Shown: one piece after another, positions 50,663-58,522 of the stretch
How positions within the stretch are numbered: the stretch's first letter is position 1
Layout: each line of letters opens with the position of its first letter
Assembly (NCBI GenBank): GCA_002104945.1
Contig: MCFH01000002.1
Span: 248,001-312,000, forward strand
Length of the DNA: 64,000 bases
Reading direction: 5' to 3'
DNA from: Piromyces finnis finn
Taxonomy: Eukaryota; Fungi; Neocallimastigomycota
Position numbers and translations under genes: made by a program
Notes under the pieces: model-generated
What the model was told of the DNA's origin: nothing
The model's database searches: none
Seen by the model: only the letters and a program-made list of their open reading frames with translations

Positions 50663-51763
50663 AAAAGAATGATGAATTAATAATTTAATATCAAATAATA
50701 ACATTCACAAAAAATTTTTTTCAATTTAAAGAAAATTAACAAAATTGTATAAATAATCATTTTATATATATCTATACAAAGGAGTATAAATAATATAATA
50801 TAACAGTAATTAACACATATATAAAATATACATAATAAAGAATTTTTTTTTCGATTTTATATCAGCATTCACTATAACCTTAAAAAAGAAAAGGAAATAA
50901 AAAAATTCTTTATGTCAGTAAAGCGTCAGTTTAAGAAGAAAATAATAAAATATATAAAAAAAAAGAATATAATATAATAATATAATAGTATTAATGATAG
51001 AAAGTACTATTATATACAATTTTATATATATATATATAAATATAAATATAAAGAAATTAAAAACAAACAACAAAAATTATTGTAAAGTACATACAAATTT
51101 TAATATACTTTTATAAATATATAGCTATTATAATAAGATTAGAATATAGAACTAATTATAAAAAATTATCAAATTTTTATTTTTTTAATTTTAATTTATT
51201 TTTATTTTTTATTTTTTATTTTTTTTTTTTTAGTATTTTTTTTTATTTTTTTTTTTTTTTTTATTTTATTATTTATTTATATTATTTTTATAATATTTAT
51301 AACATAAAAATGGAAAAAAAAAAAAAGAAAAGGAAAAAAAAAAAAAAGAAAAAAAGAAAGAAAAAATTATAAAATAAAAAAAAAAAAACATTCAAAAAAT
51401 TATAATAAAATATATATAATATTTTAAGATTTACCTAATAAATATATATATAATTATTATATTAATAATAGTAATATATCCAAATATATATATATTTTTT
51501 TTTTCAAAAGAAAAAATTTTTGTACAAAAGTAATAAAAAAAAATTGAACCATTTTATAAACATAAAAAAATATCAAAAAAAAAAAAAGTGTTTAAATATA
51601 TTTAGGTGTATTTTTTTTAATCGACTAGGTATTAATATTGTAAGGCGAATGATAGTTTAGTCGTTCGTAAAAGTTATTCAGGGTTATTAGAAATTTAGGT
51701 ACAACAGTTTAAGAATAATTTCATTTTTTTAATTGAAAAATATTGTTAAATCATTGGGGCCTC

Positions 51764-51776
51764 AGGGCAATTTGGT
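51764..51776 (+). repeat. Left target-site duplication of the full-length LINE (AGGGCAATTTGGT)
   Basis: An identical 13-mer occurs at 57551-57563, directly after the poly(A) tail. Confidence 0.92.
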
Positions 51777-54700
51777 ATAGTAATAGTTCTAATAATCCGG
51801 TGAATATTAATGTGTATGATTATTCTAGTGTGTGCAGTAAAATATTTAAATTCCTTCTTGGGGGAAGAAGTTTTAACAATATTAATTACAATTCAAGGGA
51901 ATGGAAAGAACTTTGTAAGCGTCAGATTCAATCTGGTACTAATGAAGGAACACCATTCTTGACGGGTCCTCTTGGGAACGTGCCTTCATTTATTTAATAA
52001 ATGTAGTTTCTCAAGGGGGTCTACTCATGCTCATGGTACTGAGAGAGTAGAAAGAATTAAATCCAAGTATTGCGCAATGGATGCTTGGTTAGTCTTTAAG
52101 GGAAAATTATTAGGACTAAGCTCATGGTACTGAGCGATTAAAAAACATTTTATTCATCGAATTTAAGTATTTGATGAATAAGTTGAATGTTTGATACTCA
52201 GGTAAGTTTGTATAGTATTTAATTAGAAGAGTAATACATTTTGTTGCTGTATTTTTTTTCTTTTATTCATGTATTCATGTAGTACTACTCTTCTCTTGTA
52301 AGAATCCAATGTAGTCAACTTTAGCATTTGCATTGTATTTTTATATTCATGTAGCTATTGTTGTATTGTTTCTTGTAAGAGACTGATTCACTCTACATCA
52401 TGTAAAAATACTATTCACAAGCTTTCTGGTGTCGACATTCTTGATTCAAATTTTTTACCAATTTAAATATTTAATGAAAAGAAAAGTCAAACAAGTTTAG
52501 TGTCAAAAAGCGAATCGAATTTACTAACAACAAACCAAAACTAGAATTTTTAAAGAAAATTTACAACTAGAATTCAAAAAAAAGAAACTTTAAACAAAGC
52601 ATCGTAACAATTTTTGTACTATCCAGTACTTTTAAGAAGAGAGAGAGAGACAGATTTTTTTCCATATACGTTATATTTGTAATTTTTATTAGTATTTATT
52701 TTATATTCAATATTTTTTAATTAGAATTTATTATCATGTCAGTCCTTTATATTAAAGATAAGAATTATATCAGACGTGGTACCCGGTCTTATAGTATCCC
52801 CTTAGATGATATTCGCTCCTTCTTTATCCGTGGTATTCGATCATGGTCAGTAAATATGCTATGGGAAAAACTCGAGGTTATTCTAGAAGATAAATTTAAT
52901 TCAGTTATTAGTGTTAAATATTTTCAAACTTTCAATGATCACTTTTTCTTAGTCAAGGTTCATGGTTCATCAAAAGATTGTATTAAAATCTTACACATGT
53001 TAAAGAAGAAACTTTCAGTTACCTCAATTTCCTTTTCAGCTCGTAGTAGAAGGAATCACAAATACACTTTTTCCACTCTCAAACGTAAAATTTTAGTTTC
53101 TAATAAACATCAACATTCTATTCAACATTCATTTCAACAATCAGTTCAACAATCTCATCAACAATCCGATCTTCAACAAGATCTTCAACAAGATCTTCAA
53201 CAAGTTTCCCATCATGAAAATATTCCAGATCTACAGCAAACACAATTTCAATCTCAACATTCAACAATTAATTCTAATAGTTCTATCAACTCTGATAACA
53301 GTTCAATAGTTGATAGTTCTTCAGTTTCACAGCCATCTAGTAATAGTTCTACTTATTCCTCTGATGCATCATCCATTAATAACGATGACTTTAATAATAA
53401 TAATAATAGCAACGATTCTTCCTCATCCAACAAGCCTGATAACTTTTCTTTTTGTCTTAGTTGGAACACCAATGGGTGGAATCACGAAAAGAGAGATAGT
53501 ATTAGCTATTTCACAGTTATTTTCAAACCATTATTTTTATGTTTCCAAGAAACTGGTAATGGTTCTGGTTCGAATACAGATTATCCTTGTCGTGTTACTT
53601 TGCGAAACTATAGACACTTTTTCAAGAAAGCTGACGAATCAGTTCCGGGAATGAGAGGTTTATATTTAGGTTTTCACAATTCGTGTCAAGCCTCACTTGA
53701 AAACTTCTCTGGAAAGTATATTATTTCTATTTATACTTTTAGTCTCTGGAATAGATTCAAATGCTCGATTGGAAATGTTTATATGCCTCATAGTCATCAC
53801 AACATCTATGTTGATCATGCAAAGTTAGAAGTTCGCTTGTGGTTACAAACTCATTCATCCCATCCATCGATTCTTGTTGGTGATTTTAATATGTCTAAAG
53901 TAAAATTATCCAACTGGTTATCAACTAATGGATTAGGAGATTGGGAAATTCTTCCGCTTAGAGGGTCGACTATCTCTTGGACTCGAGGTGAACAATCTTC
54001 CGACATTGACCATGCTCTTATCAATTCGAAGATGAAAGATCTTATTCACTCAGGATCATTTATAAATAATTTTTATCCTGTATCAGACCATAAGCCACTT
54101 CTTATTAATGGTAAAATTATTCCTATGGAAGATTTTTCTAATGACTTTAATGTTCCTAAGAAAATTCTGAAATGGAATAGATTAAAATGTATTGAGGAAA
54201 AGGAATCTATTCTTAGTCATAATAAATTCCAAATTCTTTCAGCAAAATTCAACGATCCTAATGTTTCTACAGATGAACTTTCCAAAGAGTTTACTTCAAC
54301 TGCTTTTTCAATTGCAGACGAGCTCAGTATTACCTCAGCAAATAATGTTATAAAGTCTTCATTTCATATTTCACAACAAATTTTTAATCTCCAAAAAATC
54401 AAAATGAAGTTGTATAAGAGATTTAAAAAAGAAAGAATTTATGATATAGATGAATTTATTAAAAGAATTAAAATCTACCATAAGCTCATTGATTACATCC
54501 ACAAAAGATGTAATGAATTTAGGAAACAAGAATATCTTCATTGGATTAAAACAGGATGTGAGTATATGAAGAGTCATAATCCTAAGAAGGCCTGGAAATG
54601 GATCAAGAAAACTGCAAAAATTGGAAAAGATTCTTTCTTTATTGCTCAACCAATTAAAAACAAAAATGGAGAATTAGTTGTTGCTACGGAAGAACAACTA

Positions 54701-57518
54701 GATGTGTGGCATGATCATTTCGAAAACCTTGCATCAGATCCAAGTGGTGTAAGTCTTGATTTAGAGCATTGGTATGAAGAACCAACGAATAAACGTTTTT
54801 CACTTCCTATGCTTGATGAGTGGGATATCAACCAAGATATTAGTATTGATGAAGTCAAGTCAGCTATCCTCTCTACTCCAAATTATAAAGCATCAGGTCC
54901 GGATGGTATTCCAATTGAATTTTACAAAGCATTAATTCCATCAAGTAATGATTCTAATAATGCTACAGATAATAATTCTTCCGGTAATACCACTTCAGAT
55001 AATGATGCTTATGGTTTAAATTTTATTCTTAAATTATTCAACCGTATTTGGGATGGAGATTTCCCCAACTCATGGAATGAATCCAGTATTGTTTCCATTC
55101 CTAACTAAGAAGGGAGATTTGACAGATTGTGATAACTATCGAGGTATATCACTTATCAATAATGGTATTAAGTTGATTTCCAAAATTGTCACCACTAGAA
55201 TTTCAGAATATGGTCTAAAGAATAATTTCATTAGACCTGAACAATTTGGTTTTCGAAAAAGGAAGAAAGTATCAGTCTTTTCATTTCAATCCAAGAAATA
55301 TGCCGTAGACGTCAATTAGATAATAAAGAGACATATTTGGCCTTTTTAGATTTCAGGAAAGCATACGATTCAGTCCCAATCGGTAATATTCTCCATAAAT
55401 TAGATTGTTTAGGAATCCGAGGTAAGAGTTTACAATTTATCAAAAATTTATATTTAACATCTAAGGCTAATGTCAAATTAGATGGACAATTCTCGAAATC
55501 TTTTGATGTGAAGAAAGGAGTCCGTCAAGGTTGCCCTCTTTCTCCTATTCTCTTTAATCTCTTTATTAATGATATATTTAAAGAGTGTGAAGATCTAGGA
55601 GTCAGTTTAGGTGACACTCGATGCTGTGGTGGACTTTTTGCAGATGATATAGTTATTTGTGCTCCAACAAGAGGATGCTTAAAAAAGATGCTTAGAAGAG
55701 TTAATGAATGGGCCTTGTATAATGAAATGGAATTTGGTATCCAGAAATGTTCAACGATGGTGATTCGTCCTGAATCAATAGAAAATCAGAACAAGAGAGA
55801 TCCAACATTTTACTTAGCAGGACAACCCATTCCAACTACTGATTGCTATACTTATCTTGGTGTTCCATTTGATAAGAATCTGTCCCTTAAACCAGTAATT
55901 AAAGCTCTTAATAACAAGGTTTTGAAAGGGCTTTTCTCAGTCAGTAAATTCTTAAGAAATCCTAATATTCCTATTCCTTTCAAAAAGCTAGTACTTAACT
56001 CACAAGTGATTAGCAGAGTTTCATACTTTGCACCATTACTTGGATCCAACAAAGCTAGGTCTAGGATTGCTCAGAAGCATGTTAACAAAGGAATACGATG
56101 GATTGCCGGAGTTCATAAAGCTGTATCGTTTATATCTTTATACTCTATTTCAAAAGATTTGAATATTCCTCCATTGTCAGCCAAATGTGCGTTAGCTCAG
56201 GTTAGATGTTTTAACAAATGGAAAAACTCAAATTGTATTATCTCACACCTTGTCAATTACATTCCTAAATTTAGAAAATACACGTGGTGCAAATCAAGTA
56301 GGACACTTGATAAAAAATTAAAGAAACATGGAGATGTTAAAGCAGTTAAAAACTTTTATTGGAAAGATCTCAAAGGGAATTCAATCAAAGCGCAATATTA
56401 TGATGATAATAAATTTATTGAAACTAAAGATTTTATTAAATTATGTTATGAATACCCAGAGTTTGCCTATGGCTTCTACTGGCTATTGAAAGCAAGAAGC
56501 GGATACAAGTTGGATGCTAGAGTTGCCAAAGCTGCTAAATTTGTTGATCCAGTTTGTCCTAACTACTGTCCATGTTGCAAGTGTGGAGATCAAAGTATTA
56601 AACATTGGTTATTAGATTGTCCAACATTTAGAGATATCCGTATTAAACATTATGATTCTATAATCCAGCTATTAAATTTTTTCAGTCAACGTAATTCCAA
56701 TAGTCCTATCAATAATAATGAAAATGTTAATATCAGCAGAGATAGCAATAACAGTAATAGTAATAGTAACAATAGTAGTAATAACAATAGTAATAGTAAC
56801 AATAGTAATAATAACAATAGTAGTAATAGAAATAGTAATAATAACAATAGTAGTTATAGAAATAATAATACTAGTAATGATAGCAATAGTGAAGATAATA
56901 ATTCTAATTTAGATAGTAATTTAGTTAATGATAGTAATAGTTCTAATAATCCGGTGAATATTAATGTGTATGATTATTCTAGTGTGTGCAGTAAAATATT
57001 TAAATTCCTTCTTGGGGGAAGAAGTTTTAACAATATTAATTACAATTCAAGGGAATGGAAAGAACTTTGTAAGCGTCAGATTCAATCTGGTACTAATGAA
57101 GGAACACCATTCTTGACGGTAACCGCGGAACTTCTAACCAAAATCATGCCTTTTGCTATTGGCCAGCAATGGTCAATGTTCAAAAGGTTTGAAGCAACAT
57201 CCAAGAGCGTCAATGCTGAAGAAACAGTAAGACAGGCCAGGAGGGCCAGCGCAACCAATGGAGATCATAATTTTGTCCCATGATAAAATTTTGATCTTTG
57301 GCTCGGTGTCCCATTGGAAGTCAAATACAATTATTATACTTTAGTATGATAGTGGCTTTCTTACTTTAATTAAAATTACTAGAATACATTATACCCAATT
57401 TTTATTCATTTGTGTTTATTTAAACATATTTTTTTTATTTTTATTTTATTTTAATTTTTATATTTCATGTATTATAATTTTAATTAAATTAATAATAAAG
57501 TTTAAAATATTTGATGCC

Positions 57519-57551
<33 letters not shown>
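51777..57551 (+). mobile_element. Full-length non-LTR retrotransposon (APE-RT, RTE-like), about 5.8 kb, poly(A)-tailed, with a 13-bp TSD
   Basis: Single long APE+RT ORF, AATAAA at 57494-57499, A30 tail at 57522-57551 and a perfect TSD. The RT motif PKKGDLTDCDNYRGISL resembles RTE-group elements; the clade call is tentative. Confidence 0.92.
52736..57283 (+). pseudogene. Retrotransposon polyprotein (N-terminal domain, AP endonuclease, reverse transcriptase, CCHC knuckle) broken by two frameshifts
   Basis: APE: LSWNTNG, CFQET, LVGDFN, SDIDH, SDHKP (~53445-54100). RT: GPDGIPIEFYK, EQFGFR, FLDFRKAYDSV, GVRQGCPLSPILFNLFI, LFADD, YTYLG. Knuckle: CPCCKCGDQSIKHWLLDC. Frameshifts near 55105 and 55260. 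Confidence 0.92.
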
Positions 57552-57557
<6 letters not shown>

Positions 57558-57563
57558 TTTGGT
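57551..57563 (+). repeat. Right target-site duplication of the full-length LINE
   Basis: AGGGCAATTTGGT, identical to 51764-51776; the first A is shared with the poly(A). Confidence 0.92.
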
Positions 57564-57896: not shown

Positions 57897-58522
57897 GATA
57901 AGAATTTATCTCTTAAACTAGTTATTAGAGCTCTTAATAATAAGGTTTTGAAAGGACTTTTCTCAGTAAGTAAATTCTTAAGAAATCCTAATATTCCTAT
58001 TCCCTTCAAAAAGCTAGTAATTAAGTAATTAACTTACAAGTGATCAGCAGAGTTTTATACCTTGCACTATTACTTGGATCCAACAAAGCTAGGTCAATTA
58101 CATTCCTAAATTTAGAAAATATATATGATACAAATTAAGTAGGACACTTGATAAAAAATTAAAGAAGCATGGAGATGTTAAAGCAGTTAAAAACTTTTAT
58201 TGGAAAGATCTCAAAGGAAATTCAATCAAAGCTCAATACTATGATGATAATAAATTTATTGAAACTAAAGATTTTATTAATTATATTATGAATACCCAAA
58301 GTTTGCCTATGATTTCTACTGGCTATTGAAAGCAAGAAGCGGATACAAGTTAGACACTAGAGTTGCAAAAACTGCTAAATTTGTTGATCCATTTTATCCT
58401 AATTATTGTCAATGTTGCAAGAGTAGAGATCAAAGTATTAAACATTGATTATTAGATTGTCCAACTTTTATGTATTAAATTAATAATAAAGTTTAAAAAT
58501 ATTTAATGTGTTAAAAAAAAAA
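57897..58522 (+). mobile_element. Older 5'-truncated, internally deleted copy of the same LINE family
   Basis: Colinear but diverged relative to ~55871-56062, ~56252-56637 and ~57468-57521 of the full element. Ends in an A10 tail at 58513-58522. Flanked by the degenerate TSD TCCATTTTAGACAA (57883-57896) / TCCCATTTAGACAA (58523-58536). Confidence 0.88.

What the first reader, a model, noticed from the sequence alone, without database searches (positions are those of the whole stretch)
51777..51965. LINE whose 5' end is an exact 189-bp copy of its own ORF 3' region, joined at a splice-donor-like site
Seen in sequence: directly after the left TSD, 51777-51965 is base-for-base identical to 56931-57119, the last coding part of the same element. 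It lies inside the TSD pair, so it was part of the integration event. It lacks the 3' UTR and poly(A), so it is not a simple second truncated insertion. In the internal copy the match ends at TTGACG|GTAACC, a GT donor-like site, and the 5' copy continues TTGACG|GGTCCTC into the structured leader. Established knowledge: non-LTR RTs (R2 shown directly) can jump from the 5' end of one RNA to the 3' end of another. Penelope, TART and HeT-A use terminal repeats or upstream-copy promoters. Inference, three models: (a) a one-off template jump onto a fragment of element RNA; (b) a transcript spliced from a donor near the ORF end onto the element 5' end, from a tandem upstream copy or by back-splicing/circular RNA; (c) a heritable pseudo-LTR in which the ORF 3' region acts as the element's promoter. 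Models b and c would be an unusual replication strategy for an APE-type LINE.
Basis: partly seen in the sequence, partly recalled or inferred. Interest (0 to 1): 0.8.

Follow-up and report, generated by a model that had tools for sequence, protein, structure and literature searches.

The report
LINE copy with self-derived 5' block
One copy of a very abundant jumping gene (a LINE) in an anaerobic gut fungus carries 189 bases of its own gene end stuck in front of its normal start; this is a one-off by-product of how the element copies itself or piles onto its own copies, not a new replication strategy.

Summary
Window 51777-51965 equals 56931-57119 (189/189). It sits between a perfect 12-bp target-site duplication (51765-51776, 57552-57563) and the element's normal 5' end (51968), with a 2-nt filler (GT).

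The splice and pseudo-LTR models fail. The junction is unique in the genome. Of 542 copies of the 15-mer ending at 57119, 541 continue as the normal ORF. The family's 5' end is a fixed (C)CCTCTTGGG.

Two readings survive and give the same product:
- A one-off reverse-transcriptase template switch from the RNA 5' end onto a second LINE RNA (about 0.5).
- A full-length copy that landed 189 bp inside an older 621-bp truncated copy, whose duplicated 3' part was then lost or never made (about 0.33).

The second became a serious rival because most 'internal pieces' on other copies' 5' ends turned out to be left halves of older copies split by later insertions, with ordinary 12-15-nt duplications.

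All these nested hits are co-oriented and close to the 5' end of the split copy. I cannot explain that.

The scan noted the same family habit before on other DNA of this genome (s1-173588), read there as serial template switching.

Verdict: new member of a known kind, modest interest.

The parts
51765..51776 (+). left copy of the 12-bp target-site duplication GGGCAATTTGGT
   Evidence: exact repeat at 57552-57563; only two occurrences in the window
51777..51965 (+). 189-bp 5' block, identical to the element's own ORF 3' region
   Evidence: 189/189 identity to 56931-57119; the only extra element-derived piece at this locus
51966..51967 (+). 2-nt junction filler GT between the block and the normal 5' end
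   Evidence: other copies have 0-3 filler bases here, nearly always ending in C; the window is one of 3 of 172 units with T at position -1
51968..52735 (+). 5' UTR; the first 122 nt (51968-52089) are the three-hairpin leader unit that many copies carry in tandem
   Evidence: 5' motif found 581 times in the genome; fold z-scores -4.2 and -5.7; no Rfam match
52736..55108 (+). ORF piece with the AP-endonuclease domain
   Evidence: Pfam Exo_endo_phos, E 1.3e-05; the frame ends at a private 4-bp duplication
55053..55319 (+). short ORF piece holding the start of the RT domain, between two private frame breaks
   Evidence: Pfam RVT_1, E 6.4e-06; a 1-bp deletion near 55256-55261 relative to 11 other copies
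55337..57283 (+). ORF piece with the RT domain, a weak zinc-knuckle match and an Asn/Ser-rich tail; it contains 56931-57119
   Evidence: Pfam RVT_1, E 3.4e-23; best solved relatives are human L1 ORF2p, then R2
56931..57119 (+). internal counterpart of the 5' block
   Evidence: identical to 51777-51965; the ORF continues in frame past 57119
57284..57551 (+). 3' UTR and 30-A poly(A) tail (57522-57551)
57552..57563 (+). right copy of the target-site duplication

Best explanation
The element (window 51777-57551) is a full-length copy of a young, very abundant APE-type LINE. The host is an anaerobic gut fungus that earlier scan notes call Piromyces finnis. I propose the following sequence during the insertion that made the 12-bp duplication. 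Reverse transcriptase copied the LINE RNA up to its 5' end. It added one or two bases. It then switched to a second LINE RNA, landed at position 57119 and copied 189 nt before the cDNA was joined to the target. Shown: the anatomy, the uniqueness of the junction and the position inside the duplication. Inferred: the switch itself, and that the acceptor was RNA. The block lies upstream of the leader. Since the family's copies almost always start at the same base, the block is probably not transcribed and not inherited. It is a dead-end by-product.
For: The block is in sense orientation. It lies inside the same perfect target-site duplication as the full-length copy. It has no poly(A) of its own, and no continuation of it follows the element's poly(A). 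It joins exactly at the family's fixed 5' terminus with 2 filler bases. Fourteen simple insertions with identified duplications show 0-2 filler bases at the same point. The junction is unique in 56 Mb. The two 189-bp copies are identical, whereas the window's alleles at four variable sites occur in only about 100 of about 540 other genomic copies (against 46/47). That favours a sibling RNA over an unrelated older copy by a factor of at most about 6. In all ten verified nested insertions of this family the right half of the split copy is still present, even where this left adjacent direct repeats of up to 5.5 kb. Loss of a 0.47-kb repeat here would therefore be the exception. Template switching by LINE reverse transcriptases that yields sense-oriented chimeras inside one target-site duplication is documented in fungi (PMC2104539, PMC3510499).
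Against: I found no unambiguous template-switch product in this family. Most 'pieces' on other 5' ends proved to be left halves of split older copies. None of 14 simple insertions carries a foreign RNA piece. Nested, co-oriented self-insertion is very common here, and the 189-bp length fits the range of those left halves (28-350 nt). The identity argument is weak because the haplotype frequency is about 18%. The copy is not brand new, since it has private indels and a private substitution. A secondary deletion therefore had time to occur.
Confidence: 0.5

Rival explanations
1. Nested insertion into an older copy. A 621-bp 5'-truncated copy (56931 to poly(A)) was already at this site and owns the 12-bp duplication. 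A full-length copy later landed in it in the same orientation, with its 5' junction at 57119. The second copy of about 57108-57551 plus poly(A), which such an insertion normally leaves behind, is missing for one of three reasons. It collapsed by recombination between the adjacent direct repeats. Or the new cDNA was primed in the old poly(A) tail and joined upstream with a 0.43-kb target deletion. Or the nicked antisense strand primed on the homologous internal site of the RNA instead of on its poly(A).
For: Co-oriented self-nesting with ordinary duplications is the rule in this family. Ten cases are verified, with 12-15-nt overlaps between the left and right halves: L029, L064 (two levels), L089, L068, L066, L065, L009, L076/75 and L035. 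In a sample of 87 five-prime ends, 23 abut internal element sequence and 9 more abut another copy's poly(A), all in sense. Left halves are 28-350 nt long, like the 189-bp block. The window copy is old enough to carry private mutations.
Against: It needs two or three events instead of one. In every verified nested case the right half is still there with a normal overlap (10 of 10), including adjacent repeats far longer than the 0.47 kb that would have had to collapse here. The older copy would have to match the newcomer at all 189 positions, which has about 18% chance.
Confidence: 0.33
2. Splicing model. A read-through or circular transcript was spliced from a donor at 57119/57120 onto the element's 5' end and then retrotransposed.
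For: Head-to-tail arrays that could give read-through transcripts are common. An earlier scan note reports spliced retrocopies of a LINE in this genome (s1-176576; not tested here). A GT can be read at the boundary if it is shifted by one base.
Against: Of 542 genomic copies of the 15-mer ending at 57119, 541 continue with the normal ORF, and the only exception is this block. The ORF reads through in frame. Copies keep 57120-57551. No sampled copy has AG or GGT in front of CCTCTTGGG, and the base before it is C in 94% of units. Pieces on other 5' ends stop at about 20 different positions, and only one of these is followed by GT.
Confidence: 0.03
3. Heritable terminal repeat, or a daughter of a nested source locus transcribed from upstream (5' transduction).
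For: Leader duplications in this family are clearly heritable. A 122-bp unit with a GC linker and a diagnostic G-to-A change recurs at many loci with different flanks.
Against: The 30-nt junction has one match in the genome even with 3 mismatches allowed. No internal-piece junction recurs at loci with different flanks in the sample. L068 and L078 share their flanks and are duplicates.
Confidence: 0.03
4. Assembly artefact. The block is a misjoin, or a real tandem 3' duplicate was collapsed by the assembler.
For: Reads were not available. The family has hundreds of near-identical copies.
Against: There is no sequence overlap at the junction to mislead an assembler. The whole structure spans 5.8 kb inside a 1.96-Mb contig. 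Comparable short LINE tandems are resolved elsewhere in the assembly.
Confidence: 0.04

Closest known systems
Chimeric retrocopies made by LINE reverse-transcriptase template switching (U6/L1 in mammals; WEIRD/Mg-SINE/MGL in Magnaporthe, PMC2104539; Zorro3 switching to 35S rRNA in yeast, PMC3510499)
   Same: The parts are fused in the same transcriptional orientation. Poly(A) is present only at the 3' end. The whole is flanked by one target-site duplication. There are a few untemplated bases at the junction.
   Different: Here the 5' partner is the element's own ORF 3' region rather than a cellular RNA. The switch would have occurred exactly at the 5' end of a full-length template. A DNA-level origin cannot be excluded.
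R2 end-to-end template jumping in vitro (Bibillo and Eickbush 2004, cited in PMC3510499; from my own knowledge otherwise)
   Same: The reverse transcriptase reaches an RNA 5' end, adds untemplated bases and continues on another RNA.
   Different: R2 jumps onto RNA 3' ends. Here the landing point is internal (57119), unless the acceptor was a broken RNA. R2 has a different endonuclease and is site-specific.
Tail-to-internal LINE tandems and nested self-insertions (Drosophila non-LTR dimers by double insertion, PMC5932611; nested Zepp LINE clusters in Coccomyxa/Chlorella, PMC3446292)
   Same: Copies of one LINE family pile onto each other, with 5'-truncated members and duplications at the joints. 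This is the habit that underlies the rival reading.
   Different: In the window the right half of the presumed target copy is missing. The strict co-orientation and the 5'-proximal position of the hits in this family are not described in the passages I read.
Tandem 5' promoter units of LINEs (mouse L1 monomers; A-modules of Dictyostelium TRE5-A; from my own knowledge)
   Same: The family's 122-nt leader is multiplied in tandem and inherited.
   Different: This concerns the leader only. The 189-bp ORF block is not repeated at other loci.
Terminal-repeat strategies
   Same: A sequence from the 3' region is also found at the 5' end.
   Different: Those repeats are present in most copies and take part in the life cycle. 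This one occurs in a single copy.

Membership tests
APE-type non-LTR retrotransposon (LINE), L1-like | AP-endonuclease domain upstream of a reverse-transcriptase domain | tested here: met
   Pfam Exo_endo_phos (E 1.3e-05) and RVT_1 (E 3.4e-23) in that order. The RT is closest to human L1 ORF2p among solved structures.
APE-type non-LTR retrotransposon (LINE), L1-like | Poly(A) tail, variable target-site duplication, frequent 5' truncation | tested here: met
   30-A tail and 12-bp duplication in the window. Duplications of 10-14 nt at 14 other copies. Many 5'-truncated copies.
APE-type non-LTR retrotransposon (LINE), L1-like | C-terminal cysteine-rich zinc knuckle | tested here: inconclusive
   zf-RVT match at E 0.004, below Pfam's cut-off. 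A CxxC...HxxxxC text is visible in the translation.
Template-switch chimeric retrocopy | Both parts in sense orientation, one poly(A), one target-site duplication around the whole | tested here: met
Template-switch chimeric retrocopy | The junction was formed on RNA during one insertion event, not by later DNA events | not testable with these tools
   Nested insertion plus loss of the duplicated 3' part gives the same sequence. An allele with the older copy only, or de novo insertion assays, would decide.
Spliced LINE retrocopy | Junction at GT...AG signals, used recurrently | tested here: not met
   541 of 542 copies read through 57119. No AG context at the family's 5' end. GT appears only after shifting the boundary by one base.
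Terminal-repeat retroelement (pseudo-LTR) | The same terminal repeat is present in many independent copies | tested here: not met
   The junction is unique in the genome at up to 3 mismatches in 30 nt.
Nested self-insertion (split older copy) | The right half of the split copy resumes after the insert's poly(A), with a 10-15-nt overlap | tested here: not met
   After the poly(A) comes the non-LINE duplication and unique DNA. No element sequence follows until an unrelated, diverged fragment at 57897. The rival therefore needs an extra loss step.

The most novel reading that the evidence does not exclude
This LINE family homes into its own copies, always co-oriented and within a few hundred bases of the 5' end of the copy it hits. 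Such homing could be guided by pairing of the LINE RNA with the antisense DNA strand, or by attack on a still unfinished integration intermediate. On this reading the window's structure is the one-step product in which the nicked antisense strand primed on the homologous internal site of the RNA instead of on its poly(A).
Probability: 0.12. Interest if true: 0.7.

Novelty: new member of a known kind. Interest (0 to 1): 0.33.

Why it matters
By itself this copy is a by-product and shows no new replication strategy. Its use is as a clean case: a single block, a non-LINE target and a perfect duplication. It belongs to a family that is unusually prone to stacking on itself. If 5' self-chimeras prove to be true template switches, the family offers a natural record of how LINE 5' ends gain new sequence, including inherited tandem leaders. 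If they are nested insertions, the strict co-orientation and 5'-proximal position of the hits point to a targeting rule that I did not find described.

Tried and rejected
Ribozyme at the leader: no Rfam match at E up to 10 over 51700-52800.

tRNA targeting: no tRNA gene in the 64-kb window. One sampled chain starts 23 nt behind a tRNA-Ala.

Target-site duplications of four other piece-bearing copies, searched with 'A10, gap, flank' patterns. L009 gave a single genome-wide hit 9.4 kb downstream on the same strand, which marks a compound array. L062, L080 and L008 gave nothing on their contigs.

I replaced it with a pattern that prints the 3' flanks of the first 100 poly(A) tails.

My first family-level reading was that about a quarter of 5' ends carry template-jump pieces. 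I withdrew it after searches showed properly nested left and right halves.

Deletion inside a head-to-tail dimer: rejected as a general cause, because every junction ends exactly at the 5' terminus.

Private shared variants in the two 189-bp copies: none exist.

No protein database search, structure prediction or complex prediction was needed.

Full report
OBSERVATION

Window 51777-51965 and 56931-57119 are identical over 189 bases in direct orientation (family D11). The 12-mer GGGCAATTTGGT occurs only at 51765 and 57552. It directly flanks the block on the left and a pure 30-A tail (57522-57551) on the right. The chance of that 12-mer at a fixed place is about 5e-9. The unit 51777-57551 is therefore one insertion-bounded structure.

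Between the ends lie an AP-endonuclease domain and a reverse-transcriptase domain. The RT is closest to human L1 ORF2p among solved structures. The shared text ends at TTGACGG.

THE FAMILY

- The genome is 56.5 Mb in 232 contigs. Earlier scan notes name it Piromyces finnis. I did not test the name.
- The 5'-terminal motif occurs 581 times, and the 15-mer ending at 57119 occurs 542 times.
- Copies are 97-99% alike.
- In 172 leader units the text CCTCTTGGG is preceded by C in 162. The RNA therefore most likely starts at CCCTCTTGGG, and the window's GT (51966-51967) is filler.
- Fourteen simple insertions could be matched to their 3' flanks. They show duplications of 10-14 nt and 0-2 filler bases before that C.
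- The first 122 nt fold into three hairpins, with no Rfam match. Many copies carry this unit in tandem with a constant GC linker and a diagnostic G-to-A change, so leader duplications are inherited.

SPLICING AND PSEUDO-LTR MODELS

- The 30-nt junction has a single match in the genome, even with three mismatches allowed.
- Of 542 copies of CACCATTCTTGACGG, 541 continue with T, the normal ORF. The only exception is the window's block.
- The ORF reads through 57119 in frame, and all sampled copies keep 57120-57551.
- No copy has an AG context in front of the 5' end.

I reject both models.

WHAT THE OTHER 5' ENDS SHOW

I sampled 87 non-redundant 5' ends.
- 23 abut internal element sequence.
- 9 more abut another copy's poly(A).
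- 34 have only leader duplications.
- 21 have nothing.
- There are 257 sense matches against 3 spurious 23-nt antisense ones.

I first read the internal pieces as template-jump products. Printing the 3' flanks of 100 poly(A) tails and the junctions inside my loci showed otherwise. In ten cases the piece is the left half of an older 5'-truncated copy. Its right half resumes after the inserted copy's poly(A) with a 12-15-nt overlap. The cases are L029, L064 (two levels), L089, L068, L066, L065, L009, L076/75 and L035. The structures are properly nested, as successive insertions would be and serial RNA jumps would not.

Tail-to-internal LINE tandems by double or nested insertion are known in Drosophila (PMC5932611), and nested LINE clusters are known in green algae (PMC3446292).

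THE WINDOW IN THAT LIGHT

The window differs from those cases. The block lies inside a non-LINE duplication, and nothing of the element follows the poly(A). Two routes give exactly this sequence.

(a) A single event. The reverse transcriptase reached the RNA 5' end, added one or two bases, switched to a second LINE RNA at 57119 and copied 189 nt. This mechanism is documented for fungal LINEs (PMC2104539, PMC3510499).

(n) A full-length copy landed 189 bp inside an older 621-bp truncated copy, and the duplicated 3' part is gone. It may have been lost by collapse of the adjacent repeats or by a 0.43-kb target deletion. Or it was never made, because the nick primed on the homologous site of the RNA.

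Points for (a):
- It needs one event instead of two or three.
- In 10 of 10 verified nested cases the right half persists, even with adjacent repeats of up to 5.5 kb.
- The two 189-bp copies are identical, while the window's alleles at four variable sites occur in only about 100 of about 540 other copies. That is a likelihood ratio of at most about 6.

Points for (n):
- Nesting is very frequent.
- The block length fits the left halves.
- I found no unambiguous template-switch product in the family.
- The copy is old enough to carry private changes.

I put (a) at about 0.5 and (n) at about 0.33. Two other sampled cases belong to the same undecided class: the inner piece of L068 and the leader piece of L013.

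UNEXPLAINED

All nested hits are co-oriented. None of 23 loci is antisense, which has a chance of about 1e-7 under random orientation. The hits lie 28-350 nt from the 5' end of the copy they split, although 0.4-5.5 kb was available. The combined p is about 4e-6 over ten cases, two of which lie in the same copy. Neither the weak nick-site preference (an A at the start of most duplications) nor poly(A) targeting explains this.

It should be rechecked for matching right halves.

VERDICT

The interesting models are refuted. What remains is a one-off by-product of a known kind.

Noticed in passing
family-wide: L029, L064, L089, L068, L066/L065, L009, L076/L075, L035: Later copies of this LINE sit inside older truncated copies, always in the same orientation and only 28-350 nt from the older copy's 5' end, with ordinary 12-15-nt duplications. 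The orientation and position bias is significant and unexplained.
   Followed up: partly
window 55101-55108 and about 55256-55261: The window copy's ORF is broken by a private 4-bp duplication and a private 1-bp deletion that 11 other copies lack. It also has a private T at 55352. The copy is therefore defective and not brand new.
   Followed up: yes
window 57897-58470: There is an older, diverged (88-92%) fragment of the same LINE (about 55871-56630, with a 190-nt internal gap). It is co-oriented, lies 333 bp downstream of the young copy's target site, and lacks its own 3' end.
   Followed up: partly
G000 contig C1:1537811-1541207 and 1549314-1550747: The element's 3' region recurs at a 942-bp period with the same poly(A)-to-internal junction in each unit. 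This is a small tandem array, probably expanded from one tail-to-internal dimer.
   Followed up: no
L071 (contig C13:174534-178130) and L076 (contig C57:133780-135829): One LINE chain starts 23 nt behind a co-oriented tRNA-Ala gene. Another chain's outermost LINE piece directly abuts the first 25 nt of a tRNA-like sequence, with no complete tRNA found there.
   Followed up: partly
window 51968-52089 and leader units in L007-L089: Partial leader duplications end at recurrent points (52031-52034, 52055, 52089). Right halves starting at 52021/52022 after poly(A) tails show that at least the first point is an insertion hotspot in the loop region of hairpin 2.
   Followed up: partly
G000 contig C65:1370-1459: One poly(A) tail is followed by the reverse complement of the element's 3' UTR, a tail-to-tail pair. 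It is the only clear antisense neighbour I saw among 100 printed 3' flanks.
   Followed up: no
L068 (contig C7) and L078 (contig C61); L079 (contig C65) and L081 (contig C68): L068 and L078 share the same LINE mosaic and the same flanks, and L079 and L081 show the same architecture. They look like duplicated or alternative-haplotype contigs, so I dropped L078 and L081 from some of the counts.
   Followed up: partly
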